Shown: positions 1,827 through 42,783 of the stretch, piece by piece | Layout of the letters: each line of letters begins with the position of its first letter | Numbering within the stretch: position 1 is the stretch's first letter | Assembly (NCBI GenBank): GCA_038087875.1 | Contig: CM075985.1 | Span: 11,780,001 to 11,844,000 of the forward strand | Direction of reading: 5' to 3' | DNA length: 64,000 bases | Source of the DNA: Malacoraja senta | Lineage: Eukaryota | Made by a program: the position numbers and the translations under genes | The notes under the pieces: generated by a model | Databases searched by the model: none | Told to the model about the DNA's origin: nothing | What the model saw: the letters and a program-made list of their open reading frames with translations, nothing else

Positions 1827-4800
1827 ATAGTAAGATTAAGCGAGAACTTACCAGTTTGAAGTTTGATCATTATTTTATGAGGAGTTACGATGAGCAATTA
1901 CGTGAAGAACCCCGCCAGTCGGCATGCGCGTCAATCTTCAAAGCAGTGGTGCGAAATCACAGTTAATAGTAACTGAAGTAACATAGTAAGAATATAAAAC
2001 AGACCTTCCAGTTGACCTTTATGATATTGAGGGCCGGGAGCGGTGGGCACGTAATCGCTCATCGTAACTCCTCATAAAATAAAGATCAAACTTCAAACTG
2101 GTAAGTTCTCGCTTAATCTTACTATTTTACTTCGAAGTCATGTGAGTGATTCCGTGAAGATTTCAAAGCTCTGAGATTTCATGCCGTAGATACGAATCCA
2201 GGTGTCTCACACTGCATCAGTTGACTCAGGAGGAGTGAATAATGAGCAATACAGTGAAACATGGTACAGTTGAACATGTTGATGCTTTAATTCACAAACA
2301 AAATAAAGAAAATACAATAGCGACCCCTCTCTCGCAGGGGGAAGCTATGAAACAGAACTTAAAATGGAATGGGCGAACACCCCGGTTTCGATAAGTGGTT
2401 TATTATAAAACCGGTGAAATGTCAGTTCATTTGACCATCCTGCGGCTGCAAGGATATGATGTAGAGGGACGTCCATTGCCTTCGCTGCTGACGTTGATGC
2501 CGCCCTGGTGGAGTGAGATTTAAAATTGTCACGTGTATACACGTGTATACTGATAATGCAAAGGCAAAATAGCACAGCTGAAAGCCAATATATTGCCAAT
2601 TATAATTGATGAATAGAAGGCTGCTTGATAACAACAACAAGGTTGTTACAGGCTTCAATTAATTCCAATCTCTTGCCTCAAGGCGGAGTCCCAGACAAAT
2701 TAATAGAGTTAAAGGTAAATCCCAATAATCAATAATTTCAGTTGGTATCAATTTACATGTAACTGGATGGGTGAGAAACCCAATTTCTCAAATATAGTTA
2801 GGTGGCTGATACAGCTAATTTAGCAAAATACAGCGTTTAGAATGTCATCCCGCTGGCCATGACAATTGTTTTTTAGCTCTGAGCAGTTGAAGCACTGGTT
2901 TTAGTAATTTGGTAAATAACCTGGGAGCTGAAGTTAGCCCATTTTGCAACACTTCTAACTGTATCCAATGTTCAATAGATTCAGAATCAGTTCCTGTGGA
3001 TTGGAGGATAGCTAATGCTATCCCACTTTTCAAGTAAGGAGCGAGAGAGAAAACGGGGAATTACAGACCATAGCCTGACTTCGGTGGTGGGAAACATGCT
3101 GGAGTCAATTATTAAAGAGGTAATAATGGGGCATTTGGATAGCGGTAAAAGGATTAGTCCAAGTCAACATGGATTTATGAAAGGGAAATCATGCTTGCCT
3201 AATCTTCTTGAATTTTTTGAGGATGTGACAAGTAAAATGGATGAAGGGGTGCCAGTGGATGTAGTGTATCTAGACTTTCAGAAAGCCTTTGATAAGGTCC
3301 CGCACGGGTGACTGGTGACTAATATTAGAGCACATGGTATTGGGGGTAGGGTGTTGACAGGGATAGAAAATTGGTTGGCAGACCAGAAGCAAAGAGTAGG
3401 AGTGAATGGGTCCTTTTCAGAATGGCAGGCAGTGGCGAGTGGACTGCCGCAAGGCTCGGTGTTGGGGCCGCAACTGTTTACCATATATATTAATGATTTG
3501 GAAGAGGGAATTAGGAGCAACACTAGCAACTTTGCGGATGACACAAAGCTGGGTGGCAGTGTGAAGTGTGAAGAGGATGTTAGGAGGTTGCATGGTGACC
3601 TGGACAGGTTGAGTGAGTGGGCAGATGCGTGGCAGATGCAGTATAATATAGATAAATGTGAGGTTATCCACTTTGGTGGCAAAAACAAGGGGGCAGATTA
3701 TTATCTCAATGGGGTTAGGTTAGGTAAGGGGGAGGTACAGCGAGACCTGGGTGTCCTTGTACACCGGTCACTGAAAGTTGGCGTGCAGGTACAGCAGGCA
3801 GTGAAGAAAGCTAATGGAATCTTGGCCTTCATAACAAGAGGATTTCAGTATAGGAGTAAAGAGGTTCTTCTGCAGTTGTATAGGGCTCTGGTGAGACCAC
3901 ATCTGGAGTATTGTGTACAGGTTTGGTCTCCTAATTTGAGGAAGGACATCCTTGTGATTGAGGCAGTGCAGCGTAGGTTCACGAGATTGATCCCTGGGAT
4001 GGCGGGACTGTCATATGAGGAAAGATTGAAAAGACTAGGCTTGTATTCACTGGAGTTTAGAAGGATGAGGGGGTATCTTATAGAAACATATAAAATTATA
4101 AAAGGACTGGACAAGCTAGATGCAGGAAATATGTTCCCAATGTTGGGTGAGTCCAGAACCAGGGGCCACAGTCTTAAAATAAAATAAATTTCACCCAGAG
4201 AGTTGTGAATTTATGGAATTCCCTGCCACAGAGGGCAGTGGAGGCCAAATCACTGGATGGATTTAAGAGAGAGTTAGATAGAGCTCTAGGGGCTAGTGGA
4301 ATCAAGGGATATGGGGAGAAGGCAGGCACGGTTTATTGATAGGGGACGATCAGCCATGATCACAATGAATGGCGGTGCTGGCTCGAAGGGCCGAATGGCC
4401 TCCTCCTGCACCTATTTTCTATGTTTCTATGTTTCTATGTCTATGTTTCTATCATTGCCCCATCCAGCTAAATTTCAAATATCTCCAGTGCCCTGTGAAT
4501 GGAAACTGATCCCATGGAATTTAAACAGTCACGAAGTTTCCTATTCAGAAATGTCTATACTGCACATGCGAGTTGACAATGAACAGGCCACATCTGCCAT
4601 AATTGCGAGCCTGCCTTGAAAGCCAACTCCCTTGGTTGTATGCTGTGCAGTATAAACTAATCTCATGTTATCATTGTCATCTGTACAAAAACCAAGTGTA
4701 AATATTACCAACTTGTATCCGTGACAGGAGGCATCATATGGCTCCATCTTCATCCTTCATACCTCTGAAAGGGAGGACTTATGCAACTTGAACCAGGAGC

Positions 4801-6945: not shown

Positions 6946-8163
6946 TACTTCTCCTCTCCTCAGGAAATTGTGGGAGACCTGGTTGAAATTTACGAGTCGT
7001 CATTGAATACAGGAAAGGTGCCGGAAGAATGGAGGGTGGTAAATGATGTGCCACCATTCAAGAAGGGCGGCAGGAATAAAGGAGCTATCCCACTATGGTG
7101 ACCTAATCTGCAGTTCAGGAGAGTTTGCCCTCGACTCATACTTGCAGCATGGTCGACATGAGGTCCTAGGTGGTCCTAGGAGGTGTTTATAAATGGGCTG
7201 TCCCACTTGGGCGATCTAATCCACGAGTTCTGGCAGGTTTGCCCTCGACTCATACTCGCAGCATGGTCGACACGGTGTCCTAGGAGGTCTTTTTAACTCT
7301 CCTTCATGCTGGAGAGTAGTCCCCATGTACTCGAGGCCTCAGCTAGGTCGCAACATATTTTCCAACGATGAAAAATGCCCGCGAGTAAAAAAAGGTCGCC
7401 ATGGAAAAAAACAATACTTTTTTTACTCGTAGGTTTAATCGTAGTAGGTCATAGTAGGTCATAGTAGGTCGGCATGTTATTCATAGGTAATTGAAGGTAA
7501 TCAAGGGTAGTCGAAGGTAATCAAAGGTAGTCGTAGATAATCTTCAACATAGTCGAAGGGAGGTCGAAGGAGATCGAAGGAGGTCGTCTTCACTCTCCAC
7601 TATTCGGTGAAGGCTATGTACTTAACTTTCTCTGTTTCTTTTCCGAGTACAGGCCTTGTGGATGTGATTCGGGAATCAAAGGGTTAAAAGGCTCCTGTAC
7701 CCGATTGGCCAAGCTGCGTCAGGTGACTCATCTGAAGCATAAATACCAGAACTTCCCAGAATTCTCTCTCTTCGACGTCGAGCCTGCCTGTGAGCTGACT
7801 GATGGAGTGAGCTGCAGAAGGCCTGGCCACATGGCATAGAACTTTGTGTACTTTCACAATTACTGATTATCAAATGTTGCATTGGGACGGATAAGGGCTG
7901 ACCTTAGAGTTTTCGGTATTTTGTTTCAGGGTTATATATCTTTAGGCAGGTTAGAGACTCCGGTTCGACGGTCCATCACGTGGCTGGCCGGAGCACGGTT
8001 CAATTGTTTGTTAGTCCATCCATATCCCAGACTGGGTTGTTTGAATCAGGTTTGGGGTTTTTGTGTCCCATTGAAATAATTAAAACTATTTTTGAACTTA
8101 AACCTGGTTTTTGAATTATGTTACGCGGCTCTGAAGTACCTGCTTTCGGGAGTCGTAACAAAA

Positions 8164-11100: not shown

Positions 11101-12192
11101 GGCTGTGTAACTCTGAGGCTTTGGAGTCGCTTCCCTTGCGGCTGTCGCATTTGACTGAAAGTCAGCGGGGTGATCTGCTTGATTTGGTGAAGTCAAATGG
11201 GTCACTGTTCTTGGATGTGCCTTCTCAGACGTCTGTGCTGCAGCATGACATTGACGTGGCCGGTGCTGCGCCAATTAAACAGCATCCGTATCGGGTCAAC
11301 CCTGGCAGGCGTCATCGTTTAGGGAGTCAGGTTGACTATATGCTGCGGCATGGCATAGCTGAACCTAGTTGTAGTCCGTGGAGTTCTCCGTGTCTACTGG
11401 CTATGAAGGCTAATGGGGAGGACAGGTTTTGCACGGACTTTCGGAAAGTGAATGGTGTAACTAAGCCAGATTGCTATCCTCTCCCACGAATGGAGGATTG
11501 CGTGGATCGTGTGGGAAGTGCATCTTTTGTGTCTAAATTGGACTTGTTAAAAGGGTATTGGCAAGTTCCCTTGACTGGGCGGGCGAGGGAGATCTCTGCG
11601 TTCGTTACGCCTGATAACTTTCTGCAGTACACAGTAATGGCATTTGGGATGCGCAATGCGCCGGCAACCTTCCAACGGTTGGTGAACATTGTATTGTCTG
11701 GTTTGTCCTTCTGTGAGGCATACCTTGATGATTTGGTTGTGTGCTCCAGGTCGTGGATCGAACACATCAGTCATCTGAAGGAGGTATTTCATCGTCTAGC
11801 GGAGGCAAAGCTAACTATCAATCTGGGGAAGTGTGAGTTTCGCCAGGCCACGGTAACGTATCTGGGTAAGGTGGTGGGCCGGGGTCAGGTTCGCACTCTC
11901 AAGGAAAAGGTGGAGCATATTGTCGCATTTCCTGCTCCAACCTCGAGGACTGAACTCCGTAGGTATCTGGCTATGGTTGGGTACTATAGGGGATTCTGTC
12001 CAAACTTCTCTGCGGTGGCTGCCCCTTTAACGGATTTGCTGAGTCCGAAGTCAACAAGCCTTTGAACATACTAAAAGTCTTCTGGTGCTCGCACCTGTGC
12101 TTGCGGCACCTGATTTTGAGCGTCCATTTAAGCTGGCAGTGGATGCTAGTGATCGTGGGGTTGGGGGAGTTCTTCTACAGGATGATTCAGAT

Positions 12193-13169
12193 AATAATAA
12201 TAATAATAATAAATTTTATTTGTGGGCGCCTATACCAAAGTCTCAAGGACACCTTACAGAATATAACAGAGAAACATAAATCGGAGTAAAATAAGTTATA
12301 AAAACATGACCAATACACAAATTAAAGACAGAATTCGATTCAAAGACATAAAAAAAATCAGAAACACAATGTGAAGAGAGAGCTGCGGCAGCTAAACCGC
12401 GCAAGCGTCCACGCTCCCTTCCGACCGCCATCTTGGACACAGACTAACATAGACACTACACACAAAAATCATCCCCCCACAATGGTTACCACTGTGGGGG
12501 AAGGCACAATATCCAGTCCGCAACCCCAGTTCTCCCCAAAGTCAGGCCAATTGAGGCCTCCGCTATTACCTCTACGGAGGCCCGATGTTCCTGGCCGTTC
12601 TCGCCGGGTGCAGTTGCCCCGGCGTCGGGAGAGTCCTCGCAGCGGCTGGGCCACCTGGAACGGCCGATTCCCTACCGGAGTCCGTGGCCTCCGAAGCCGA
12701 CAAGGCCGCGCCGGTTTGGAGCTCCCAGGCTCCTGATGTTAAAGTCGGCGCCGCCCGCTCCTCTCCGCAGACCCGCAGCCCGGAGGTGTCGAAGTCGGCG
12801 GTCACAGCTCACCGGAGCTCCAACGCGTCGATCCAGCGCGGCGACCCAGGCAAGGCATCACCCGCTCCGCTCCGCGATAGTGCCCCAGCGCTGTGCCGCC
12901 ACCGAAGCCGAGGTGCTGGGCGGTCCCCGTCAGGAAACGGCGCTCCATGCCCGCTGGTAGGCCACGAGGACGGGTCGACGGGGCAGCCAGGAGAAAAAGC
13001 TGCCGCCCCGACCAGGTAGGGACCTAGAAATAAGGTTACCCCCTTCACCCTACATTAAAAGACGATATCTCCCACAGACAGTACATAGGACGCACTAAAA
13101 CTGCAAAAAAAAAGTGAAATAAACGGACGGCTGCTGATTAGCAGCCGTTCCCCAAGATGGCTCCTCCTC
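12193..13169 (-). mobile_element. GC-rich non-autonomous non-LTR element with an L2-like 3' end, inserted in the Gypsy RNase H
   Basis: It interrupts ...LLQDDSD|GVEHPVSYFSKK, has a (TTA)n tail at 12193-12211 and is flanked by GAT on both sides. Confidence 0.75.
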
Positions 13170-15750
13170 GATGGGGTGGAGCATCCAGTTTCATACTTCT
13201 CTAAGAAGTTTAATCAACATCAGAAGTGGTACTCCACCATTGAGAAAGAGGCCCTTGCTATGTTGATGTCTCTGAGTCATTTCGAGGTTTAAGTTGGCTC
13301 CTCGAATGTCCCTGTCATCGTACTCACGGATCATAATCCGTTGGTATTTTTGCATAATATGAAGAATAAGAACCGGCGGTTAATGAGCTGGAGTTTGCAG
13401 CTGCAAGACTACAACCTGGAGGTCAGGCATATCCGCGGCAAGGATAATGTCTTGGCTGACGCCTTGTGGAGTTTAGCTCATGAATAGTTTCTGGGATTTG
13501 GTGGTGTTTTTTTTTCTCTCTTCTTCCAAAACGTATTCAGTATCTTTGGGTGGGGGTGGTAGGCATTTCCGAGTACAGGCCTTGTGGATGTGAGTCAGGA
13601 ATCAAAGGGTTAAAAGGCTCCTGTACCTGATTGGCTAAGCTGCGTCAGGTGACGGGTGACTCATCTGAAGCATAAATACCAGAACTTCCCAGACTTCTCT
13701 CTCTTCGACGCCGACCCTGCCTGTGAGCTGACTGCTGGAGTGAGCTGCAGAAGGCCTGGCCACATGGCATAGAACTTTGTGTCCTTTCACAATTACTGAT
13801 TAACAAATGTTGCATTGGAACGGATAAGGGCTGACCTTAGAGTTTTCGGTATTTTGTTTCAGAGTTATATATCTTTAGGCAGGTTAGAGACTCCGATTCG
13901 ACGGTCCATCATGTGGCTGGCCGGAGCACGGTTAAATTGTTTGTTAGTCCATCCATATCCCAGACTGGGTTGTTTCAATCAGGTTTGGGGTTTTTGTGTC
14001 CCATTGAAATAATTAACACTATTTTTTAACTTAAACCTGGTTTTTGAATTATGTTACGCGGCTCTGAAGTACCTGCTTTCGGGAGTCGTAACAGTAGGTC
14101 GGCATGTTATTCATAGGTAATTGAAGGTAATCAAGGGTAGTCGAAGGTAATCAAAGGTAGTCGTAGATAGTCTTCAACATAGTCGAAGGGAGGTCGAAGG
14201 AGATCGAAGGAGGTCGTCTTCACTCTCCACTATTCGGTGTCCAATTTTCCCGAAGCTAGTCGAAGCTAGTCTTCAACATAGTCGAAGGAGGTCGAAGGAG
14301 GTCTTCTACATAGTCGATGGAGGTCTTCAACATGATACTTTTTCAAACATTCCTAAACTCTTCTGAACTCGCGGATTAGGTCGCCACAGTGGGGCAAGCC
14401 CTTAATGCTGGCAACTATAGGCCAGTGAGCTTAACATCTCTAGTTGGAAAGTTACTACAGAGAATTCTGAGGGATATGAAAAACTTTCATTTAGAAGGAC
14501 AAGGGCTGATTAGGAATAGACAAGATGGTTTCGCATGTGGGAGGTCGTGTCTCATGAATCTGATTGAGTTTTTTGAAGATGTGACCGAAAAGGTTGATGA
14601 GGACAGAACTATAGATGTTGTTTCAATGGACTTTGGCAAGGCATTTAACTAAGTTCCATATGGTAGATAGTTGAATGGATAGAAAATTGGCTTCATGGAA
14701 GGAAGCAGAGGGTGATGGTGGAAGGTTGCTTCTCAGGCTGGAAACCTGTGACCAGTGATGTGCCTCAGGGCTCAGTGCTGGGCCCTTTTTTGTTTGTCAT
14801 CTATATCAATGATTTGGATGAGAACATACATGACAAGATTAGCAAGATTGCAGATGATACAAAAGTGGGTGGTATTGCAGATCGTGAAGATAGTTGTGAA
14901 AAATTGCAGCAGGATGTTGATCAGTGGCCCAGGTGGGTTGAGGAATGGTTGATGGAATTTAATACAGGGAAATGTGAAGTGTTAAATTTTGGGAGTTCCA
15001 ACAGGGCAGGACCTACACAGTGAATGGTAGGACTATGGGGAGTGTTATAGAGCGGAGGGATCTATGAGTGCAGGTACATGGTTCCTTGAATGTGGAGTCA
15101 GAGCTAGGGCTGTTAAAAAGGCTTTTGGCACACTGGCCTTCATCAGTCAGAGTGTTGAGTATAGATGTTGGGAGGTCATGTTACTGTTATATATGTTGGT
15201 GAGGCTGCATATTGTGTTCAGTTCTGTGCACCATGTTATAGGAAATATGTTGTCAAACTGAAAAGGGTACAGAGAAGATTTATGAGGATGTTGCCAGGAC
15301 TCGAGGGTCTGAGCTAGTGTGAGAGGTTGAGTAGGCTGGGATTCTATTCCTTAGAGCACAGTATGATGAGTGGTGATCTTATAGAGGTGTATAAAATCAT
15401 ATGAGGAATAGATCAGGTATGTGCACCAAACCTCTTGCCCAAAGTAGGGGAATTGAGGACCAGACGACATAGGTTTAAGGTGAATGGGAAAATATTTAAT
15501 AGGAATCTGATGGGTAACTTTTTTTCACACAAATGGTGGTGGGTGTATGGAAGGAGTTGCCAGACGAGGTAGTTGAGGCAGTTACTATCGCAACGTTTCC
15601 GAAAAAGTAGGCCAAGTACATGGATAGGGCAGGTTTGGGGGGGCATCTGTGCCAAGCTACGGGTGGGGCTAGTGTAGCTGGGACATGTTGGTCGGTGTGT
15701 GAAAGTTGGGCTGTAGGGCCTGTTTCCACACTGTATGACTCTATGACTAT

Positions 15751-15925
15751 CGATGAACCAGAGAGGGACTGAGGGGTGGATAATGTGAGGCTGTTTTGTC
15801 TGTCTGGAGAGCCAAGTACTGGGGTAGTGTCAACATCTTTGCATACCCAGCAGGCAGAGGTATTCCTGCGTTCAGTGAACTTATAAGCCAAAGCTAAAAA
15901 CTGGTTAAAACCATCTACTGCATTT
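15751..15925 (-). pseudogene. Retroviral env SU N-terminal fragment
   Basis: GFNQFLALAYKFTERRNTSACWVCKD matches the N-x-F-L-x-L-A...N-x-S/T-x-C-W-V-C pattern of gamma-type env proteins. It is cut off by the CR1 tail. Confidence 0.72.
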
Positions 15926-16418
15926 GAAGTACAGAAAAAGTAAAATTCATGCAAGAGTGACCATCAACCTCTGGGTGCAATAGTTGTTGAAAATTCACGC
16001 ATTAAAAAACCCATAATATAATGGTTCAGACAGATCTTCCTCTGAACGGAGGACATAAGCATTTTACATTTTGTAACATTTCAGAAAAATTACTTTTACA
16101 ATAAACTGACAGAAAGCAACTTCACATACATCACATTCCCAAAGTTAAACCCATTTCATGAAAAAGTATGGAGAATAAAACACCTCTACCTGCCTACAGT
16201 TCTTGGTTCAGATTACACCATGTGACAAAATGTGGCCAGGGAAAAGATGTATAAAACACAAGTTAAAGTTATCTAACTCTGTGCAAAAGCAGATGCTAAA
16301 AACGTAAAAAGGGGAAAAGGAGGTTTATCCTAACTTCAAAATAAGTCACTTTCATAGTTTGAAATATACAACCGTACTAGAATCTGTACAGACTAAAAAG
16401 TTTGTTATTATACAGATT

Positions 16419-16742
16419 TCAGTCATTTTCTGACAGTGTTTTCTTCCGTTTATACTGTTTGTTTTCTTGCTGGAGTTCCAGATTTTGGGCTCTCAGTTTC
16501 TCAATCTCTGCATCCAGTTCTTGAAGCTTGCTTTCTATCAACTCACCACCCCGGGCCACCTTTTTCCCTTCTAGACGTCATCTCAGCCGGTTGTTCTCAT
16601 CTTCCAGCCTGGACAGGCACTTCTCCAGCTCCAGGTACTTGTGGATCAGCTCCTGCTTGCTCATGTTCTGCAGGCTCTCAGCGTGATACTTCTCGTATGT
16701 CTCAGAGAAGTCCTTCTGCAGGAACTCACTGCCGTTGTCTCC
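16419..16742 (-). pseudogene. HEXIM1: HEXIM (HEXIM1-like) C-terminal coding fragment (cyclin T-binding coiled coil) with one premature stop, followed by probable 3' UTR to ~15930
   Basis: GDNGSEFLQKDFSETYEKYHAESLQNMSKQELIHKYLELEKCLSRLEDENNRLR*RLEGKKVARGGELIESKLQELDAEIEKLRAQNLELQQENKQYKRKKTLSEND*. This closely matches HEXIM1 GSEFLQRDFSETYERYHTESLQNMSKQELIKEYLELEKCLSRMEDENNRLR. In-frame TGA at 16578-16580 and natural stop at 16419-16421. Confidence 0.95.
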
Positions 16743-16932
16743 TGTTTCCAGAAATACCTTGTCTGCCGGAGATCCAGACGGGACTAGGGGGTCACCCAAT
16801 CGACCTCTCTGATCTCTTGTTCTTCATTCTCCTCTATTATTTTATTATTATTTTATTATCCTGCTGCAACTTTCTGCCTGGTCATTTTAGAAAATCTTTC
16901 TTACCTTTTCCCGACGAGCTGGAGGTTTCCAT
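16743..16932 (-). pseudogene. Putative gag N-terminal stub abutting HEXIM
   Basis: ATG at 16932 gives METSSSSGKGKKDFLK*, one substitution from a myristoylation-type MGTSSS. After a frameshift, RGRLGDPLVPSGSPADKVFLET runs in frame into HEXIM. The call rests mostly on its position after the PBS and leader. Confidence 0.5.
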
Positions 16933-17261
16933 TTTGGTATTTTAAACCACAAATCTTAAACAACTAAAATATAATGGCTATAATTTCTTACTCTATCTTA
17001 CTATTTTCAGTCATACTCTAACTCTTAAATTAACCTTCTAAGAGCTCAGTTCATAAAGTCCCCACTCCAAATTCCAATCCTTTTATCTTTTACTTAATTT
17101 CACTTAAATTTAGTTGGGGTCTATTCCTCAGTCCCTGTTTTCCTTTACCCTTCCTCTCATGGGATATTTTTCTTCCCGTACCGTTCTGCCACAGGTCTGG
17201 GTCACGGCTGGTATTTCTCCACCGTGCAGGCATTTCCATGTCCGGATCTCATTTGTTAGGG

Positions 17262-17279
17262 ATCCTGCCGACTACGCCA
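17262..17279 (-). promoter_or_regulatory. Retroviral primer-binding site, tRNA-Ser
   Basis: Minus strand reads TGGCGTAGTCGGCAGGAT, an 18 nt complement of the tRNA-Ser(AGA) 3' end including CCA, 2 nt downstream of the LTR terminal CA. Confidence 0.93.
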
Positions 17280-17281
17280 GG

Positions 17282-17655
17282 TGGTCAGAGAAATCAATCG
17301 AGGACTCCGACTTCTGAAGAGCGAGACTTTATTACATGAAATCTCAAAGGAACTACTCCGGGAGACAGTTCCTTCACAGTACAGATGGCATGGGTTTATA
17401 TACTGCTGAACAAACAAGTATATGTGCAGACTAGCCCAGACCTCACTCAGTTCCTTAAACAGCTTAGTCAGGGCATTACGATTTTATCGAAAATGCCTAA
17501 ATTACAGATAATAACAACACGCACAAAGAAACAGAAATCTGTGCTCAATGCTCCAATGATTCTGCCAAGGCTTTCTTAAGAACAAGGCAGCATCTGTAGC
17601 TTCGCAACACGTATCATCAAGCAGAACAGGTAAAATTTTGCAAAATTCTGTCACA
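17282..17655 (-). mobile_element. 5' LTR of the HEXIM-carrying ERV
   Basis: Minus strand TGTGACAGAA...CTCTGACCA, with TATATAAA (17395-17402) upstream of AATAAA (17328-17333), directly followed by the PBS. The outer boundary is inferred from the TG start. Confidence 0.82.
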
Positions 17656-18539
17656 ATTGGTGAAGAGTACATGGCACAGATTCCCCTGCAAGGGTGGTGA
17701 TGAATGAACAGAAATGCTCCTTTCTATCTGAATGTCACCAGAATATCTGGCTATCGGTCATGTGAGCAAAGTTTGGGGAATAGAATGATTCTGTGTCATG
17801 TGGAGCAACACCTGGAGAAGTGGAAATCACCTGGTGATTTTGGAAACATGATTGATAAAGCAAACCTTTGATTGATTTAAATCACTTAAATAGAGTGAGA
17901 GAACTGAATGTTGTGTTACAAAGGGTTCACGGAGTGGAGGACATGAAACGCAGAGTTAGCATGCAGGTACCGCAAGGAATTGGGAAGCTGATGGGATGTT
18001 GGCTTTTATTGTGAGAGGAATGGAGTCTAAGTAGGGAAGTCCTGCACTTTTACAGGTTGCTGGTGAAAGTGTCCCTGGAGTACATGGACAGTTACGGGCT
18101 CAGGTTATCAGTAACGATCTGCTTGAACTGGAGGCAGGACAGAGAAGGTTCACAAGGTTGTTTCCTTGGATGAAGGAGTTGATATCTAGGCCACAGGTAT
18201 TCTTGCAGGAGTTTGAAACAGTGTTTGTTCAGTGTGCATTCTTCAGCTGTGCATCTCTGTCCTTCCTGGTCCCCAGCAGTCTCCCAATCCATGAGGTACA
18301 GTTCCACAATGCTGGATTTCCTTGAAAAGCAGTCGAGATTTGGGCCAGTTACAGTGGTTTAAAGTGGTGGTTTGTGTTGGGTAGTCCAAGGGTGAACATG
18401 ACTGGGCCAATTCAGACCTTGTTGTGGGTTACTTATGGTTATTTATTAACATGTCTTTGGCAAGACCAGCATTTGTTGTCCATACCTTGTTTCCCTGATT
18501 CTGACTGTGCCTCACATCATTTTGTTGTTATCTATTAGG

Positions 18540-19590
18540 TCCACCTAAACTTGTAATGCCCCAGAGAAACAATCCAAGTTTGTACATCCTCTCTTTACAG
18601 CTAAAAGCCTTTTGTCCAGGCAGCATTCTGGTAAACCTCTTCTGCATTCATTCCAAAGTCTCTTCATCCTTCCTGCTATGGCAAATGCACGCATTACTCC
18701 AAATGCAGCCAAATCAGTGGCTGAAAAAGCTGCAACATGGCTACCTGATTCAGAAACTCAAAGACCAGACTTGTGAAAGTAAACGTACCATATGTCTGAT
18801 GTGACTACCACTCTAAACTACTAGACTACAAAGTTACATGCATCTTAATCTTCTGGATCAGCTGACCTTGAGGATCCTTATCAAATACCTTCCTAAAGTC
18901 CAAGTACACAACCTCCACTGCTCTACCCTCATTAATTACCCTCTTGTCAACTGCACAGATCACTAAATCAATCGTTAGTAAGATATGCTCCCCTTTTGCA
19001 GGTATGGAGGGAAGCTTAGCCACTGGGACAAATCCGAGCCCACCGACACAAGTTGTGGTCAACACTGAACTGCCAGGAAAAGCCCTAGTCAGCCAGCGTC
19101 GTTTCTCAGGCCGAGACTAAGTAAATGTGACAAGCCCAACAATTGATGCAAAAGGTCCGACCTGAGGTAGGGCAGAAATGGAGGGAAAAGCACAAGATTG
19201 CAGTGCCTCCTCCTTCAAGACCAGGACTGAGTTCCCGCAACAAGCCTGAGATTACCGGGGACACCCCGCATGCAGATATGAACTTCCTTGTCCTTATAAA
19301 TAAACTATAGTGCAAGTGTCGGTGAGGTCAGTGTTGACCCGGCTACATTCCCAAATCCCAAACCTCATTAATCTTCTGTAAACAACACAGTGCCCCCTCC
19401 TTCTTGATATTAAAATACTCTTGTGTATCAGTATATCCCACACTGATCTCCAGGACATTTCCTTGGTGAATACTGGTGCAAATACCTCATTTAGTAATTC
19501 ACTTACATCTTCTAATTCCAAGCATTAAGTTCCTCCTTTGTCCAAGTTTAGTCCTGCTTTCTCCTTAGTTACCCTCTTGTTTTTTTAATG
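18540..19590 (-). mobile_element. Old CR1 fragments interrupted by an LTR-like insert
   Basis: EGRAVEVVYLDFRKVFDK in ORF 18826-19065 and LNEVFAPVFTKE in ORF 19294-19521. Confidence 0.75.
18950..19348 (+). mobile_element. Solo LTR-like sequence
   Basis: Non-CR1 insert with AATAAA ~45 nt before a ...GGCTACA end. No internal sequence. Confidence 0.45.
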
Positions 19591-20161
19591 TATGTCTAAA
19601 ATGTAATGAAATGGGAAGTAAGAGTGAGTGGAGTGAATATACCAAGTGGGTGAGAGTGGTGTAATGTTGAGTTACTCCCACCATCTCTCTCACTCTCCCT
19701 CAGGGCATTGACTGGAGAGTTGGGGAAGGCTTGACTTCCTTCACATCATGTCCCGACACCTGTCAAGACAGCCAGAATTGTGGGGAAATTGCCCACCACC
19801 CGGTTGAGCTGATTTATAAACATACATCAGTTGTTTTCTTACAGATGTGCTGAGGAATGTAAGGTCCCAGTTCATCTTCTGCAGCCCATCCATAGGACTG
19901 TGAAAGCTCTCTCCCTGCAACTATTCCACTAACTCCCCATGTATCCTCTCCACAGCCTTTATTTCTCTCCCAGGTGCGGTGTCCGGGACCCGACACACCA
20001 GGTGCGGCTGAAGGACAAGAGTTCATTTTATAAAGTCTGTGCCGCCTTCTCCTCAGCGCAGCACTGAGTGCAGAGGTGGGGAGGAAGCAACAGTGGGACA
20101 GGAAGGCTGCGAGAAACTGGACTCACACAGCACCAAACACACAGCTTATGATGCAGTTCTC

Positions 20162-20167
20162 TTTATT
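20162..20167 (-). terminator. Polyadenylation signal of the lectin gene
   Basis: AATAAA ~115 nt downstream of the TAG stop. Confidence 0.7.
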
Positions 20168-20280
20168 ATTGGCTGAGAAGCTCAGTGAGCACAGTCACCA
20201 CAGACAATGAGAGCAGCTACAAAGAAATCAAAGCACTGGATCCACTGCTGGAAAGGATGAGTGGATGATTCTGGAGTCTT

Positions 20281-20357
20281 CTACTGATTGCGCAGGTTGT
20301 AGGAACAAACAAAACCATATCCGCTGCCACATTCCGCATCATACCATTTTCCCACGT
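20281..20357 (-). CDS. C-type lectin exon 6 (last coding exon)
   Basis: Acceptor ttttcctgcttctag, phase 1, (D)VGKWYDAECGSGYGFVCSYNLRNQ-TAG. Confidence 0.93.
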
Positions 20358-23300
20358 CTAGAAGCAGGAAAAGAGAAAAGCATTTACCTGTTAGTCCACA
20401 AGCAAAATGCTGCAGATGCTAATTATCTGAAAGAAAATGCTGGAAATACTCAATAGGTCAGGTGGCATGTGTGGAGAGGAAACAAGGAAGTCGTTGTTGG
20501 AATTTTTTTCTCAGTTCCTCTCTCCACAGATGCTGCCTGATCTGCTGAGTGTTTCCAGCATTTTCTGTTTTCCGTTTGGTCTAAATGTTTCATCTACTTG
20601 AGTCAGAGTCTGTGAGCCATTAATGTTCCCGGACTCTTGATCGGTGAGTTTGCATTGTAAATAAAGGGAGTCACTTCCTGTACACTATATACACTTCCTT
20701 ATGCATGCTGATAAGGAAGGAAGGAAGGGAATGTGGAATGTAGCTTACACTTTGAAGCTTTAATGAAATGACCTGTGTCTGAGGAGCAGTAGCAGCAGCA
20801 ACAGAGAGAGAGAGAATATTAAAAACCTTTCTTACTATAAAATAAGTATTGATCATTAAGATCAACAAAGAGGCACCTGTATTATAATAAGACAAGTGTT
20901 GTGACTAGATCCCTGATGAATCCTCGAATAACCACATTTCCCATGAAATTGAGAAAATCCATAAGGTTGGCAGTGACATTCATGGGACAATGAAGAAAAT
21001 GTGAGCTGCTGGCCATTAAATTGGTTTGGTGGACATGGGTACTGTGTTACATTATGGCTCTATCTTTTTATTAATCATCGCTCTGATTTTTATTGTTAAC
21101 TGCTTGCAACCATTAGGCACCTACCGAGGAAGTAATGTTATCATAAATGATAAAGAGGAAGGAATGAGAAAGTTTAAAGATTTAAAAGTTACAAAATGGA
21201 TTCAGCTGTAGATTTAGAAGCAATAAAATGGATGCTTTCAGCTTTCTCCTATTACATTAGCAAGGCTGCAGCATCATAACAAACATGTTTTCGCCCTTCT
21301 TCCATAACACTAGTGAGATAACAGCACAAATACATGGATGTTTTTCTCTATGATATAAACAATCAAGAGAATGTTCAGACATTTGGCTCGTACCCTTTAC
21401 AGTACAAGATTGTAATGTGCGTCAACAAGGTAAAAAAACGAATGCTTGAATCTGCATCTTTTTAATGAAATGCTTGGGCTGAGATTAATGCTCCACGTAC
21501 AAATGCTTTAAATGTTTCCCAGAGAAGGGAAGCAGAAATTCCGGGGTGGTCATTAGCCTCAAAAAACATATTAATCTGTTTTATAAGGTATTCATGACAT
21601 ACCTTTTCCTTTAAAATTTGGGGGTTAAGTCTCCATTGTGTATGTTTCTCGGCCATTCCGTTTAGTTTAATCATAAATCATAATCATAAATGTTAATGGT
21701 GCATGGTCCGAGATTATAATATTATGATATTTCGAGTTGTAGGAAAATGGTAAGACTTTGGAGTCTATTAAGAAATAGTCTATCCTTGAATAGGTTTTAT
21801 GCACTGGTGAGTAAAATAGTAAGATTAAACGAGAACTTACCAGTTTGAAGTGATCTTTATTTTATGAGGAGTTACGATGAGCGATTACGTGAAGAAGGCC
21901 GTCAGCCCGCATGCGCGTCAATCTTCAAAGCAGCGGTGTGAAATGACAGATAACAGTTGTTGAACTAAACATAGTAAGATTAGAGAGGACTAGCAGATGA
22001 TCTTTATGATATGAGGGTTGGGAGCGGAGGGCACATAATCGCTCATCGTAACTCCTCATAAAATAAAGATCAAACTTCAAACTGGTAAGTTCTCGTTTAA
22101 TCTTACTATTTTACTTCGGAGTCACGTGAGTGACTACATGAAGATGTTAAAGCTCTGTGATTTAATGCCGTGGATACATGCGTCACACACTGCATCAGTT
22201 GACCAGGATGAGTGAAAATAATTAATGCATTCAGACATGACATAGACAAAAAAGGCTGATGCTTTAATAATCAAAGAAAATAATAGTGACCCCTCTCATC
22301 CAGGGGGGAACTATAAAACAGAACCTAAAATGGAATTAGCAAAAGCCCCGGTCTGACAATAGGTTTGTTATAAAACCTTTGGAAGGTCAGTTCATTAGAC
22401 CATCCTGCAGCCGCTAGGATGTGGTCGAGAGGGACGTCCATATCCCTCGCTGCTGACGTAGATGCAGCCCTGGTGGAGTGAGATTTTAAAATGTCTGTGT
22501 CCATCATGAAATGGTCTGCGCTGTAACCTTCCTATGAGGTTTTGTGTAGCTGATGAATAAAGATAATTCGGAGCCTCTGAGGCTCTTAGTGACCTTGATG
22601 TATTGTAGTATGTGTGTAACTACACACAACCGTAGGTCTAAGGGGTATGCCATAAAAATTAATTTGAGCCCCGACACCCCTGGTCTGCTCTGCTTAATTA
22701 AATCATAAACAAAAAAGGTTATATTATCAATAGATGAAACCATGCAGTCCAATCGTAGATTATGTAACGTCTGGACCCATTGCGCTGAAACCAGCGCCAT
22801 GCGCAAGACCACCTTGAGAGTGAGATTGGGCAGAGACAGTGATGAAACTGGAGCCCACTGGCGAAGCAGCGTGAGTACCATGCTCACATCCCATATCCGT
22901 GAATATCGGGGCCTTGGGGAAGTAGAGTTAAAAATGCCCTTCATGAATCTGGTTATTAAGGGGTGAGACCCGACAGTGTGGTGTCCTGACCCCAGCCATA
23001 AGTAAGATGATAATGCACTCCTAGCACTATTTATGGCACTATAACTCAGTTTCTGTTCGTAGAATAGTGTAGATAGGAACTCCAACACATCCGTAATGCA
23101 AGCCGTGTCATACAAAATTTTCGAGAGAGAGAGCAGTACATCTCCCATTTCCTTATATGAGAGATGTACTGTTTCTGGGTACTCTTCCTCCAGGCCGCAG
23201 TGATCACATCTACCGTACGATCTGAAAGTCCGAGCCCCAGGAACGGTCTCCTCAGAATCTGCAAACCAATAAATTGATTCGGTTATGTAGTGGATGGTTT

Positions 23301-26300
23301 TCCCCGTCACAGGGTGAACCAGCAGATTTCTGCTTTTGGGGACAGCCATAAAAGGCTGTGTAATCATACCCAGGACGAGTGGGAACTAATGCTGTGTAGG
23401 CCAGTCTGGTACTACTAAAATGCCAGAGGCGGAGTCTTGCTTGATCTTAGCCAAGCATCGACTGATGAGGCAAAATGGGGGAAAGGCATACAAGAACTTT
23501 CCACCCCAGTGTAGCGAGAATGCATCTACTGCCACTGCCCCTGGGTCTGGTTCCCATGAAACATATTTTGGTAACTGGTGATTTAGTCTGGATGCAAACA
23601 AATCGATTTCCGGTACGCCATACCGAGCGACAATGTCATTAAACACTTCATGATTCAACATCCATTCTGTGTTGTCATTGAATTTCCGTGACCTGGTGTC
23701 CGTCACCATGTTATATCTACCTGGTAAGTAGATAGCTGAAACCCAGATGTTTCTCCTAATCCACCAGTGCCAAATAAGGTTAGACAATTTATCACAGGAT
23801 ACAGACTTAATTCCACCCATGTGATTAATGTATGCCACAATGTAGTGTTGTCAATCTGAAGTTGAACATGCACATGATGCAAATTGCCACAATAAGCCTT
23901 CAGCCCACAGAGTGCTCCCAACAACTCTAAGTAGTTAATACCATGTGACTGAAGAATTAATGATTTCTGCATATTCCATCTGCCACCGCAGCTTGAGACG
24001 GTGTTGGTAGCACCCCATCCTAGAGCACTTGCATCAGTATGTAGGATAACTGGTGGTGTATCGACTAAAATTGTACTGGAGCAATGTCGAATATTGGTCA
24101 CCCACCATTGTAACTCAGCAAAGGCTTCAGCTGGCAACCGCATAGGTCTACCGAAGTGACCTTTATGAAGTTCGAGTGCCTGCTGCTTATCACATTGTAA
24201 GTTTTGATAGTGCAAAGGCCCGAACTGTGCAGCTGGGAAAGCAGCCACTAATTTGCCAATTATACTAGCCACTTGTCTAATAGAAGGTTGGTCCTTAACA
24301 ATGAGATGGTTACAGGCTTCAATTAATTCTAATTGCTTGCCCCAAGGCAGAGTCACTGACATGTGAATTTAGTTAATGGTGAATCCCAAATAATCAATTA
24401 CTCTAGATGGTATCAATTTGGATTTAACTGGATGGATGAGGAACCCCAATCTCTCAAACATGAGTTTAGTAGCTGACACAGATAATTCAGCTAATTCCAT
24501 AGTTTTCCCTATTAGGATGTCATCCAAGTATGCCATCACAATATGATTCTGAGCCCGGAGTAGCCCCAGAACTGGTTTTAGAAATTTAGTGAATAATCTG
24601 GGGCCTGAGGTTAACCCATTAGGCAATGATTTAAACTGCCACAGTTGCCCCATCCAGCTAAACTTCAAATATCTCCAGTGATCCCCATGAATGGGCACCA
24701 AATTGTATGCATCTTTGAGGTCGATGCATGCCATATAACATCCCTTGGAAACCAGTTGTTTGGCCAGTAACAAAGTTTTCCATTTTGAAGTGTTTATACT
24801 GCACAAAGGTGTTAAACTCAGTCAAGTCAAGGATGATTCGGCATCCTCCATCCTTCTTTTGGTTAGTAAATATATTGGACACAAATTAGTGAGACTCATG
24901 ACACAACATCTCAATTACCCCTTTTTTGTGTAATGATTCTATTTCAGCTTGCGCATCCGCACACTCCTGTTGGGAAAGAACAAATGTGCGGTTCGGTGTA
25001 TGCTGTGTGGGTGGAAGCGAATTGAGAAGGAACTCAATTTGGAAACCTTGTATACTGTGCAGTATAAATGGATCTGATGTTATCCAATGCCATTCATTCA
25101 AGAAACATTGTAATCTCCCCCCAACTTGTAACTGATCCATAAACAAAGTGTTCCGCAAATAACCAGACTCACCTACCTCAATAGTTACTGGTGGTATGGT
25201 GTTTGTTTCCGCCCCCGAGGTTTGGGGGGTAGGACTGTTGGAGGGCGCCATCCGCGCATCTTGAACGTGGGCCGGCTAGGGCCTTGCCCTAAAAAAGGCC
25301 TCTGAGCCTGTTGTTCGGGCTTCCCACCATATTTGGCGAACCATCTGGTGTTGGGAGGAGCGTAGGGGTGCTGCCTCCGGAAAGATGAAGTCTTGGAAGA
25401 TGTTGGAACCTTCATAAGCCCGACCGTTTTAGCTTAATCATCCAGCTCCCTGACCTGCTTCGGCAGATCTTCGCCGAACAGGAGGGTCGGTGGTTGCCTT
25501 TGGAGCATATCATTTTGGAGCAACCTCTCCATCAGGTGCTCCATGTGGGTTAGTTGCCCATAGATGCTACCCATTGAAGGAGGGGAACCCTCCTGGCCCG
25601 ACTCGTCCGAGTCCACGGGCCTAACAGACTTCTTGGTGGCTTTCCGCCCCAGCGGGGTAGCCAAGGTGCTTTCAATCGGCACCAAGTCTGGAGCCGCTGG
25701 CTCCACTGCCAGCGACCCGGAAGGCGAAATCGGCGGCCGCCCGCTACCCGCAGTCCCACGGTCTTCTGTAGCCGGTTTCCCCGCGGCCCGCCTCTTCACT
25801 GTAGACATAGTCTCCACACGGTTCAAAACTTTCTGTAAGTAGAGTTAACGAACCGGGAGCAATGACCTCAGAGAGAGTTTAAGCACTTACCTGAGAATTT
25901 TAAACTTACTGCTGGAAGGAGCGACGCGCCCGCCAGTCAGTCATTGCGCAATGCGCTAGACGTAATGACGCGCATGCGGGCTGACGGCCTTCTTCACGTA
26001 GTCACTCACGTGTCTCCGAAGTAAAACAAGGTGTACAGAGTTGCTTATTGGTTACAATCTGAGGAGTATGATGATGCTACTGATTATGATATGCCAATGT
26101 ACAAGCTAGCAACTGATCTTCTCCATAAAGACTTGGTCTATTGCTAGAAATTTTAATTTATTTACCTATCTGTTATGGACTTACAGCATATTATACAATA
26201 ATATTAAAGTTCTGATCTTGAGAATATCACATTCAACCCTACAAATCCTTCACAGTGAGATCGGCCCCAGGTTGGTCACCCCTCAATCTTCCCTCTTGTG

Positions 26301-40600: not shown

Positions 40601-42783
40601 GAGGCATCACTTCTGCAGACATGGGCAATTAACTATGAAGAGGTTTTAAGGACAACGCTTATTGCTCTAACAAATGTATCTGCATGTTCAGTTTCAGATT
40701 GACAATACAATGCAAGTGGCATATATATTAATCACATCGGTGGAAACAAGTCGGAATTTTGTGATAGATTGGCTAATCAAATTTGAGCCTGGTGCATTGG
40801 AAAAGATATTTCAGCTATTTATCTACCAGGTAGATTCTACATAGTAGCAGACGCCAAGTCACGAACATTCCATGACAACATAGATTGAATGTTCAACAAG
40901 GAGGTGTTCAATAATATAGTACTTGTATATGAATGCCATATATCGATTTGTTTTGCATCAAGGTCAACCATCAGATGCCTAAATAGGTTTCATGAGAACC
41001 AGACCAGGTGGCAGTTGCAATTAATACTTTGATGTTGAGGTGGTATATAATTTTTTTTCTATTTTTTTTTTCTTCCTACCATTTTGCCTAATATGTCAGA
41101 GTCTGCAAGAAATCAAGCAGGATGCCACTTTGGGGATGCTTGTAATACCTAATTGGCCGAATCAAGCATAATTTCCTTTTGATGTTACAGTTAGGGATCC
41201 AACCTCTTTTTGGTGGTTCCCAAGCGTAGGAATTGACTGGAGCATCCGCTAACACGGCAAAGTCATCTATTATGTGATTGTATTGACTTGTTAATTTGCA
41301 GGTTTTAAGAAGGCCATACCTGGAGCAAGGACTGTCTGGGTTTACGGTGGACATGCTCACTGTAGCCTGGAGAAAGAGTACTCAAAAGGGGTATATTACT
41401 TATGTAAAAAAATGGGACCAATATTGTGTACAAAATAATATTGACTATAATACTACAGGTATTGTGGATATTTTAGAGTTCCTGTTGACCCTCTATGATG
41501 ATGAGGGGCTCAGTTATAGCACCATTAATACAGCTTTAAGTGCTTTGTCATCCTGTGGGTTGCATGGGGTCAGGAAAGATCCTATTGAGTTTTATCATAT
41601 CATAGCTGGATTGATGAAAGGAATTTCAACTCTAAATCTCCTAAACCCAGGTATATGGCGATCTGGGATGTGTGCAAGATGTTTCGACAGTAGGTTCCTG
41701 GCATGTCTCTGAATTTGCCAAACTAATCATGAAAGGGGTTATGCTCTTGGCATTGGTTCAGCATAGCAAGTGCAGATTTTGGGGAAAAAAATTCTGCTAG
41801 ACAGGATGGAAGTTGCTGAAGAGAATGTTATGTTATATAATTGCGTACTGCTTAAGCAGAGCAGGCCAGGTGTCACAGGTTTGTTAAAATTGTGTTTCAG
41901 CATAACCTACTGATCCATGTTTATGTATAATGGCACATTTATTTTCATTATATTAAAGCTATAAAGATCTTAAGGAATGTGGAAACAGCATTGTTTATCA
42001 GTTACATGAAGCCACACACGAGAGTGTCAGTGCAGACTATCTCAAGTTGGTTTAAAGCAAATGTTGATTAAGGCAGGTATTAACACTGAAGTGTATATAT
42101 CCGTTTTCCACTAATGCAGCAGCAATGTCGTCGGCTAGGACGATGGATGTTCACAGCGGCCATAGTTTATAGGTGCCGGGTGGTCAAATGAATTATTTTT
42201 TTAAAAAATTTACCATCGGCCGATTGCCTATTGGGGAGAGGCTGTTTGCAAATTCAGTATTAAGTCCTGTTTAGTTCCTCTGGGATAGACGGGTTACTGT
42301 TTGTTTTCATTATTCAAATCAATTGTTATTGCATGATATTACCATTTCATGTTTAACGCATTATTGATTGTTTCTCATCGAAAGTCAATCAATGCAGTGA
42401 GGCCGGGATTTACATCTGCGGCATAAAATCACAGAGCTTTGAAATCTTCACGTAGTCACTCACGTGACTCCGAAGTAAAATAGTAAGATTAAATGAGAAC
42501 TTACCAGTTTGAAGTTTGATCTTTATTTTATGAGGAGTTACGTTGGTGATTACGTGCCCGCCACGCCCAACCCTCTCTCATAAAAAAGGTCATATGGTAG
42601 TTCTCATGTTGCTCATCTTAATATGTTACTTCAATTATTGTGTTGTCTGTGATTTCATTCCGCTGCTTTGAAGATTGACGCTCATGCGCCCTGACGGGTC
42701 TTCTTCACGTAATCACCAACGTAACTCCTCATAAAATAAAGATCAAACTTCAAACTGGTAAGTTCTCATTTAATCTTACTATT
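37676..42783 (+). mobile_element. DIRS1-type retrotransposon (copy D), both ends present, heavily decayed
   Basis: 5' TTTTACTTCGGAGTCACGTGAG, YR N-terminus at 41296-41712 (GLSYSTINTALSALS), ICR and terminal inverted repeat at 42445-42783. Region 39170-39600 is similar to copy B 5040-5430. Confidence 0.93.
38042..38435 (-). mobile_element. CR1/L2-clade LINE 3' fragment nested in DIRS copy D
   Basis: FYKMLNG...RSRRGHS...YSNSFFPRTIKAWNNL, followed by a (CCAAGAA)n tail. Confidence 0.8.

What the first reader, a model, noticed from the sequence alone, without database searches (positions are those of the whole stretch)
15751..17655. Endogenous retrovirus that appears to have transduced the host gene HEXIM in place of gag-pol
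Seen, in order on the minus strand: LTR (TG..CA, TATA, AATAAA), a 2 nt spacer, a perfect 18 nt tRNA-Ser PBS, ~330 nt leader, a gag-like stub, 324 nt of clear HEXIM C-terminal coding sequence, ~490 nt of AT-rich sequence (probable 3' UTR), then an env-like CWVC segment. HEXIM is in the same sense as the provirus, pol is absent, and no poly(A) tract or target-site duplication is visible around the HEXIM part. Established: delta-gag / cellular gene / delta-env is the layout of acutely transforming retroviruses formed by template switching. HEXIM inhibits P-TEFb (CDK9-cyclin T), the elongation factor HIV Tat recruits, and the fish retrovirus WDSV carries a cyclin homologue. Inference: this is a fossil 'v-HEXIM' capture by a cartilaginous-fish retrovirus. 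I know of no description of it but cannot search.
Basis: partly seen in the sequence, partly recalled or inferred. Interest (0 to 1): 0.93.

Follow-up and report, generated by a model that had tools for sequence, protein, structure and literature searches.

The report
HEXIM gene fragment fused to retroelement LTR
A piece of the host gene HEXIM (its cyclin T-binding tail) lies directly after the front end of a retrovirus-like element in the same direction, which fits gene capture by a retroelement, but only this one decayed copy could be examined, so a replicating "HEXIM virus" is not shown.

Summary
Two parts of the observation are confirmed. On the minus strand, an LTR-like block is followed, after 2 nt, by an 18-nt primer-binding site. 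That site is an exact complement of the 3' end of tRNA-Ser. About 480 nt further on lies the C-terminal coiled-coil (cyclin T-binding) domain of HEXIM, about 119 codons up to its natural stop. It has one in-frame stop and no frameshift. About 450-520 nt of AT-rich non-coding sequence follows. The HEXIM piece has no poly(A) signal, no A-run and no target-site duplication. The rest of HEXIM is nowhere in the 64 kb.

Not confirmed:
- The "gag-like stub" is a 16-codon ORF with no match.
- The "env-like" piece is one CWVC motif after an N-x-S site, with no family or structure match.
- There is no second LTR, no pol, and no second copy of any part in the window.

The env-like piece is not the tail of the neighbouring LINE.

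The best reading (about 0.45) is a chimeric cDNA made by template switching of a retroelement's reverse transcriptase onto HEXIM mRNA. This process is known as LTR-mediated retroposition or transduction. A LINE later cut the chimera. The main rival is chance juxtaposition by deletion or nesting. The tests for other copies and for the parental gene could not be run with these tools.

The parts
17282..17655 (-). LTR-like block (U3-R-U5) of a retroelement. TATA-like motif at 17402, AATAAA at 17333, ends in CA.
   Evidence: Motif positions; sequence. No second copy in the window, so only the 3' edge, next to the PBS, is anchored.
17262..17279 (-). Primer-binding site, 18 nt, complementary to the 3' end of tRNA-Ser. 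It sits 2 nt after the LTR's terminal CA.
   Evidence: One exact match in the window, 0.01 expected. Identical to the first 18 letters of the antisense human tRNA-Ser templates in PMC3299991, diverging from base 19.
16779..17261 (-). Non-coding internal ('leader') stretch, partly very AT-rich. Its last ~70 nt (to about 16852) might be the frameshifted HEXIM acidic region; that test was inconclusive.
   Evidence: No long ORF. No Pfam hit for its 49-aa ORF. No Rfam element. RNA fold z = -1.8, not notable. In the acidic-region test, scores exceeded shuffles but the best hits were scattered over frames and strands.
16419..16778 (-). HEXIM fragment: C-terminal coiled-coil (cyclin T-binding and dimerisation) domain through the natural stop codon, about 119 codons. 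One in-frame stop and no frameshift. The basic region, PYNT motif and N-terminus are absent.
   Evidence: Pfam PF15313 E=4.9e-20, profile positions 95-142 of 142. PDB HEXIM1 2gd7/3s9g. Single-frame tblastn alignments 16425-16778. Alignment A1 shows every near-invariant column kept and no basic-region or PYNT columns. 84% nucleotide identity to gar and bowfin HEXIM over ~155 nt.
15964..16418 (-). AT-rich non-coding stretch contiguous with the HEXIM stop codon; probably the proximal part of the HEXIM 3' UTR. It has no polyadenylation signal and no A-run. Its 3' limit is uncertain (about 15900-15964).
   Evidence: GC 28-41% against 50-56% in the coding part. No AATAAA/ATTAAA and no A6 run. No similarity to gar or bowfin UTRs, which hardly align with each other.
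15767..15963 (-). Unassigned segment ('env-like'): an open frame with an N-x-S site directly before CWVC (15841-15852). Its origin is unknown: retroelement, more UTR, or other DNA.
   Evidence: No Pfam or PDB match. Motif statistics. GC rises to 47-50%. It is not LINE tail. No similar sequence elsewhere in the window.
14402..15766 (+). Neighbour, not part of the element: a 5'-truncated CR1/L2-type LINE on the opposite strand. Its 3' end, about two octamer repeats right after ORF2, cuts off whatever followed the env-like segment.
   Evidence: RVT_1 hits. ORF2 C-terminus and related copies. The 3' end is placed by alignment with four related LINE 3' ends in the window that stop in 2-4 octamer repeats.

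Best explanation
This is a chimeric, defective retroelement copy made through RNA.

Proposed origin (inferred): during reverse transcription of an LTR retroelement (an endogenous retrovirus or another LTR element that primes with tRNA-Ser), the enzyme switched template from the element's RNA to a co-packaged HEXIM mRNA, and probably back again. The integrated cDNA then read: LTR, PBS, leader, the last third of the HEXIM coding sequence, the start of its 3' UTR, then further element sequence. A LINE later inserted on the opposite strand and removed the 3' part from view. The HEXIM reading frame has since taken one stop.

Shown: the LTR/PBS, the HEXIM domain, their shared orientation, the truncation of HEXIM at both ends, and the absence of LINE-type retrocopy marks.

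Inferred: the template switches, the identity of the 3' flank, and any past expression.

If the copy was ever expressed from the LTR, the encoded piece would carry the part of HEXIM that dimerises and binds cyclin T. It would lack the PYNT motif that inhibits Cdk9 and the basic region that binds 7SK RNA. It could therefore only have acted as a competitor or dominant-negative on P-TEFb control. Today it is a fossil.
For: - LTR plus an exact 18-nt tRNA-Ser PBS 2 nt after a CA.
- HEXIM coiled-coil domain in the same sense about 480 nt downstream.
- The HEXIM piece is cut at both ends. No N-terminal two thirds exist anywhere in the 64 kb, and the UTR-like part ends with no polyadenylation signal, A-run or target-site duplication. 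This argues against a LINE-made retrocopy and fits template switching.
- The 3' flank is not LINE sequence, differs in composition from the UTR-like stretch, and carries a CWVC motif after a glycosylation sequon.
- The process is documented. [quoted passage not shown] Crocodilian ERVs captured KIT-ligand and nectin3 mRNAs (PMC4299795).
- The HEXIM piece is little decayed: all near-invariant residues are kept, with one stop.
Against: - No retroelement protein homology (gag, pol, env) on either side of HEXIM.
- No 3' LTR and no polypurine tract with an LTR start in the 15.7 kb downstream.
- Only one copy was seen.
- That the 3' flank is retroelement-derived rests on a 4-residue motif, expected 0.42 times per window by chance.
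- HEXIM is intronless, so an RNA intermediate cannot be proved by intron loss.
- The region is a dense nest of transposons, where unrelated pieces often end up adjacent.
- Microsimilarity at the junctions could not be examined without the parental gene.
Confidence: 0.45

Rival explanations
1. Chance juxtaposition at the DNA level. A stray 3' fragment of HEXIM (an older pseudogene or a DNA-level duplicate) and the 5' remnant of an unrelated LTR element became neighbours through insertion followed by deletion, or through rearrangement in a transposon-rich region. The shared orientation is a 1-in-2 accident.
For: - The window is a mosaic of nested and truncated transposons.
- There is no retroelement coding sequence and no 3' LTR.
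- A shark (Mustelus asterias) has an annotated, decayed 120-aa HEXIM1-like copy inside another gene. It keeps more N-terminal HEXIM sequence and shares an unusual His with the window's copy, so HEXIM pseudocopies exist in this group independently of the junction seen here.
- Frogs also hold many extra HEXIM copies.
Against: - It needs at least two independent events, with one breakpoint inside the element's leader.
- It does not explain why the HEXIM piece lacks its 3' end as well.
- HEXIM fragments are rare, so adjacency to an LTR-PBS in the same sense within 500 nt is an unlikely coincidence, although the finding was selected for exactly that.
Confidence: 0.3
2. One reading: a replication-defective but helper-spread 'v-HEXIM' retrovirus, built like acutely transforming viruses (delta-gag, cell gene, delta-env), which multiplied and entered the germ line.
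For: Same anatomy as the best explanation. A CWVC motif after a sequon lies downstream in the same sense. The HEXIM piece is exactly the cyclin T-binding module (domain map in PMC12901311), a plausible tool for a virus that depends on P-TEFb.
Against: - No gag or env homology by any tool.
- No second copy in the window.
- Short-protein (40-128 aa) and viral-contig searches with the junction-spanning ORF found no copy of the chimera; their protein hits covered only the HEXIM part.
- No open fusion frame remains.
- Nothing shows the element was a retrovirus rather than another LTR retroelement; PMC4422223 uses pol followed by env as the criterion.
Confidence: 0.1
3. A LINE-made processed copy of HEXIM mRNA that happened to land inside an older provirus.
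For: The copy is 5'-truncated, as LINE-made copies usually are. LINEs are abundant in the window.
Against: No poly(A) tail, no polyadenylation signal, no A-run of 6 or more, and no flanking duplication beyond one 7-mer expected by chance. The UTR-like part appears to stop short of an mRNA 3' end, which LINE-made copies retain.
Confidence: 0.07
4. Assembly artefact: the contig joins reads from a HEXIM locus and from a retroelement.
For: The region is repeat-rich, and the junctions could not be checked against reads.
Against: The nearest N runs are more than 35 kb away. The segments 15700-17700 are unique within the window, so there is no repeat at the junctions on which an assembler would collapse.
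Confidence: 0.05
5. Last exon of a living host gene, a HEXIM paralogue with an intron, with the LTR remnant lying in that intron.
For: An acceptor-like ...cag|G lies right where strong HEXIM similarity begins. The Mustelus HEXIM1-like model is annotated with an intron.
Against: There is an in-frame stop in the domain. No upstream HEXIM exons occur in the 46 kb upstream. Vertebrate HEXIM coding sequences retrieved here are single uninterrupted ORFs (L064, L065).
Confidence: 0.03

Closest known systems
LTR-mediated retroposition (Tan et al. 2016, Genome Res, PMC5131818)
   Same: A host mRNA fragment sits inside discontinuous LTR-retroelement sequence in the same sense, without a poly(A) tail or L1-type duplication. 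A truncated mRNA is expected from template switches.
   Different: Here only the 5' side is certainly retroelement. Microsimilarity at the fusion points could not be examined. The parent gene is intronless, so the usual proof (intron loss) is unavailable.
Host-gene capture by endogenous retroviruses in crocodilians (KIT-ligand in CrocERV29, nectin3 in CrocERV31; Chong et al. 2014, PMC4299795)
   Same: A germ-line retroelement copy carries host mRNA-derived sequence in place of viral genes.
   Different: The crocodilian cases have several copies, recognisable viral genes, full-length host ORFs and signs of purifying selection. Here there is one copy, a one-third fragment, a stop codon and no viral genes.
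Acutely transforming (oncogene-transducing) retroviruses, from established knowledge (reviewed in references cited within PMC4299795)
   Same: The proposed layout: 5' viral end, truncated cell gene in the same sense, 3' viral remnant, loss of pol.
   Different: No gag or env homology was shown. HEXIM is not a growth-promoting gene. There is no evidence of spread.
HEXIM1 C-terminal coiled-coil / cyclin T-binding domain (PDB 2gd7, 3s9g; domain map in PMC12901311)
   Same: The fragment aligns over the first coiled-coil segment at E=5e-26 and keeps every near-invariant residue. It continues through the second segment to the natural stop.
   Different: It lacks the basic region, PYNT motif and N-terminus, carries one in-frame stop, and is 60-68% identical over about 100 residues to every HEXIM retrieved.

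Membership tests
LTR retroelement / provirus | LTR ending in CA, followed within a few bases by an 18-nt tRNA primer-binding site | tested here: met
   exact 18-nt tRNA-Ser complement 2 nt after CA; 0.01 expected by chance.
LTR retroelement / provirus | Two LTRs in direct orientation, a polypurine tract and a target-site duplication | tested here: not met
   No second LTR copy anywhere in the 64 kb. The 3' part may lie beyond the nested LINE and other elements, or may be deleted.
Retrovirus (as opposed to other LTR retroelements) | pol followed by an env gene (criterion used in PMC4422223); gag | tested here: not met
   No gag, pol or env family match in the element. PDB finds nothing for the env-like piece. 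Only a CWVC motif is present.
Transducing retrovirus / LTR-mediated retroposition chimera | Host mRNA-derived insert in the same sense, flanked on BOTH sides by sequence of one retroelement | tested here: inconclusive
   5' side met. The 3' side (15767-15963) is unassigned: it is not LINE, and it has no match to anything.
Transducing retrovirus / LTR-mediated retroposition chimera | Microsimilarity at fusion points against the parental mRNA and an intact element | not testable with these tools
   No chondrichthyan HEXIM locus and no family member could be fetched.
Transducing retrovirus (replicated) | Several loci with identical junctions and different flanks | not testable with these tools
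   No eukaryotic genome DNA search was on hand. Within the window there is one copy. Protein-level and exact look-ups found none.
LINE-mediated processed pseudogene | Complete mRNA 3' end with poly(A) tail, and a flanking target-site duplication | tested here: not met
   no polyadenylation signal, no A-run of 6 or more, only a chance-level 7-mer.
HEXIM family (Pfam PF15313) | Sequence match above the curated cut-off | tested here: met
   72.6 bits against a cut-off of 29. PDB HEXIM1 E=5e-26.
HEXIM family (functional gene) | Basic 7SK-binding region, PYNT motif, and an intact reading frame | tested here: not met
   These columns are absent from the window's rows in A1 and from the whole window. 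There is one in-frame stop.

The most novel reading that the evidence does not exclude
A cartilaginous-fish retrovirus picked up the cyclin T-binding module of HEXIM, spread with a helper as a defective 'v-HEXIM' genome, and left germ-line copies. This would be the first case of a retrovirus carrying a piece of the host's own P-TEFb brake, the same control point that lentiviral Tat attacks by other means.
Probability: 0.1. Interest if true: 0.8.

Novelty: new member of a known kind. Interest (0 to 1): 0.4.

Why it matters
If the capture is real, it adds a cartilaginous fish and a transcription-elongation regulator to the short list of host genes found inside germ-line retroelement copies.

The captured piece is the module that binds cyclin T and competes with lentiviral Tat. 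That makes the question 'did an ancient retroelement tamper with P-TEFb control?' testable by plain sequence comparison across shark and ray genomes.

If it is a one-off chimera or an accident of nesting, it is an ordinary pseudogene fragment.

Tried and rejected
- LINE 3' UTR idea: I suspected the env-like piece was the antisense tail of the neighbouring LINE. This was rejected. Four related LINE 3' ends in the window stop in 2-4 octamer repeats right after ORF2, and this LINE has about two such repeats ending near 15766.
- HEXIM N-terminal half elsewhere in the window: none. Weak hits in the leader are basic low-complexity noise at inconsistent query positions.
- Extension of HEXIM into an acidic stretch upstream in another frame: scores exceed shuffles, but the best hits scatter over frames and strands. 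Inconclusive.
- Parental shark HEXIM: two full-length searches, one with a mixed profile that included the window's pieces as separate rows, listed only bony vertebrates among the best 120. The one shark hit, P0027, has no DNA served.
- 3' UTR check against gar and bowfin loci: nothing alignable, and those two UTRs barely align with each other.
- Other copies: exact look-ups of 10 window ORFs, a short-protein search with the junction-spanning ORF, viral-contig scans for the PBS and for HEXIM, and a metagenome scan for the LINE end that gave 63 chance hits with no real similarity. All were empty.
- Rfam on 12000-21000: no retroviral RNA element. The leader fold is unremarkable. The bacterial promoter/terminator scan is irrelevant here.
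- Not attempted: a scan for exons of the gene that hosts the Mustelus copy, because it would have needed a very long typed list of references.

The first, at the start, was a tRNA-Ser sequence. The second, later, was a stretch around the CXXC motif of a gammaretroviral Env.
Full report
**What is there**

Reading the minus strand from 17655 down, the first feature is an LTR-like block. It has a TATA-like motif at 17402 and AATAAA at 17333, and it ends in CA at 17282. After two bases comes an 18-nt string at 17262-17279. This string occurs once in the window, against 0.01 expected even with three mismatches allowed. A full-text search found the same 18 letters at the start of the antisense DNA templates for human tRNA-Ser in PMC3299991. 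The window matches for exactly 18 bases and then diverges, which is how a retroelement primer-binding site behaves. The 5' edge of the LTR cannot be verified, because no second LTR exists in the window.

**The HEXIM part**

About 480 nt downstream, in the same sense, lies the C-terminal part of HEXIM.
- Pfam PF15313 matches at E=4.9e-20, covering profile positions 95-142 of 142.
- The solved HEXIM1 cyclin T-binding domains 2gd7 and 3s9g match at E=5e-26 and 1e-24.
- A HMMER scan of 1.84 billion representatives returned 121 hits, the strongest of them HEXIMs wherever a source name was available, and the best start at the same point in the query.
- tblastn with about 360 HEXIMs gives single-frame alignments with outer bounds 16425-16778, reaching the natural C-terminus and stop codon.

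The fragment has one in-frame stop and no frameshift. In an alignment with seven full-length HEXIMs it keeps every near-invariant residue of the domain. Its core is 84% identical at the nucleotide level to gar and bowfin HEXIM.

The basic region, the PYNT motif and the N-terminus are missing from the locus and from all 64 kb on both strands. By the domain map in PMC12901311, what is present is the coiled coil that dimerises and binds cyclin T. What is absent is what binds 7SK RNA and what inactivates Cdk9.

**The flanks**

Between the PBS and HEXIM there is no long ORF. The 'gag-like stub' is a 16-codon ORF, and neither it nor the 49-aa ORF in the leader matches any family. An acidic stretch in another frame just upstream of HEXIM might be the HEXIM acidic region, but the test was inconclusive.

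After the HEXIM stop codon come about 450-520 nt at 28-41% GC. This stretch has no polyadenylation signal, no A-run of six or more, and only a chance-level 7-mer shared between the two sides. That this stretch is the HEXIM 3' UTR follows from contiguity only. Gar and bowfin UTRs do not align to it and barely align to each other.

Then GC rises to 47-50%, and an open frame carries N-x-S directly before CWVC (15841-15852). Pfam and the PDB give nothing for this piece. CW[LIVM]C is expected 0.42 times per window by chance, or 0.017 times with the sequon. This is suggestive given its position but post hoc, and far from showing an env gene.

I tested whether this piece is simply the tail of the neighbouring LINE, which lies on the plus strand with RVT_1 hits. 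It is not. Four related LINE 3' ends in the window terminate in 2-4 octamer repeats right after ORF2, and this LINE has about two such repeats ending near 15766. The segment 15767-15963 is therefore real flank of unknown origin, cut off by the LINE.

**Search for other copies and for the parent**

Nothing in 15700-17700 recurs in the window at the DNA or translated level. All external searches were empty:
- exact look-ups of ten ORFs from the locus;
- a protein search with the ORF that spans the 5' junction, whose hits covered only the HEXIM part;
- scans of viral contigs;
- a metagenome scan, which gave chance hits only.

Full-length cartilaginous-fish HEXIMs did not appear among the best 120 of two searches. 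The only shark hit is a 120-aa 'HEXIM1-like' model from Mustelus asterias. It lies antisense inside a MAGI-type gene, is itself decayed, retains more N-terminal HEXIM sequence, and shares an unusual His with the window's copy. The window's fragment is 60-68% identical over about 100 residues to every bony-vertebrate HEXIM retrieved. That fits an outgroup origin but does not identify the parent.

**Interpretation**

The anatomy is an LTR-PBS-leader followed in the same sense by an mRNA-like HEXIM piece that lacks both its 5' two thirds and a proper 3' end, with no LINE hallmarks. Template switching by a retroelement's reverse transcriptase onto a co-packaged host mRNA predicts exactly this. The process is documented as LTR-mediated retroposition in flies, mosquito, zebrafish, chicken and mammals (PMC5131818), and as host-gene capture by ERVs in crocodilians (PMC4299795). 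I put this at about 0.45.

The main rival, at about 0.3, is accidental adjacency in a region that is a mosaic of nested and truncated transposons. Supporting it, stray HEXIM copies exist in a shark and in frogs.

It has no support beyond the shared anatomy: no gag, pol or env homology, no 3' LTR, and one copy. I put it at about 0.1.

The remaining readings are minor:
- A LINE-made retrocopy, about 0.07. Against it: no poly(A) signal, A-run or duplication.
- An assembly artefact, about 0.05. No gaps lie nearby and the junction sequence is unique.
- A live exon, about 0.03. Against it: the stop codon and the absence of upstream exons.

Because HEXIM coding sequences are single ORFs (L064, L065), intron loss cannot be used as evidence of an RNA intermediate.

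**Novelty and importance**

Even if the capture is confirmed, the kind is known, so this would be a new member: a new host group and a notable cargo. The cargo is the interesting part, since it is the cyclin T-binding module, the surface for which HEXIM1 and lentiviral Tat compete (references within PMC12901311). If copies with identical junctions turned up in several loci or species, the finding would become much more interesting. As it stands it is a single, decayed, truncated locus.

The decisive comparisons need eukaryotic genome DNA that these tools do not reach: the parental HEXIM locus, intact family members, other copies, and long reads.

In my private reasoning I twice wrote short sequence strings from memory: a tRNA-Ser sequence at the start, and later a stretch of a gammaretroviral Env around its CXXC motif. 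The PBS identification rests. The assessment of the env-like piece rests.

Noticed in passing
window 7076/7463-14401 (+): An LTR-type retroelement with split direct repeats: 7463-7609 equals 14093-14239 at 99%, and 7640-8160 equals 13566-14093 at 95%. It has a gag-like ORF (SCAN-like domain plus zinc knuckle). Its integrase ORFs lie before the reverse-transcriptase ORF, which is either an unusual gene order or a nested or rearranged pair.
   Followed up: partly
window 4189-4440, 42781-43000, 45310-45530, 57508-57760 (+) and 15570-15766 (+): 3' ends of CR1/L2-type LINEs that terminate in 2-4 copies of an octamer right after ORF2. This was useful for fixing the LINE boundary next to the finding.
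   Followed up: yes
window 20439-20559: A long hairpin with sub-threshold matches to several microRNA-precursor families (best 44 bits against a gathering score of 100). Probably an inverted-repeat transposon.
   Followed up: no
proteins P0014, P0258-P0260, P0006, P0124-P0128 (frogs): Rana temporaria has four near-identical short HEXIM1-like proteins (147-173 aa, lacking the acidic region) on different chromosomes. Ranitomeya has six of about 300 aa. HEXIM appears prone to duplication in some lineages; the mechanism is unknown.
   Followed up: partly
protein P0027, Mustelus asterias GCA_964213995.1: An annotated 120-aa 'HEXIM1-like' gene lying antisense within a MAGI-type gene. It is decayed, and it shares the unusual His in '...QELIH' with the window's HEXIM fragment. 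It may be an orthologous or related pseudocopy.
   Followed up: partly
window 18182-18427 and 63748-63992: An unknown repeat (83% identity) about 530 nt upstream of the LTR.
   Followed up: no
window 22507-25275 (-): A run of long ORFs that look like a DIRS-type retroelement by eye only; not tested against any family library.
   Followed up: no
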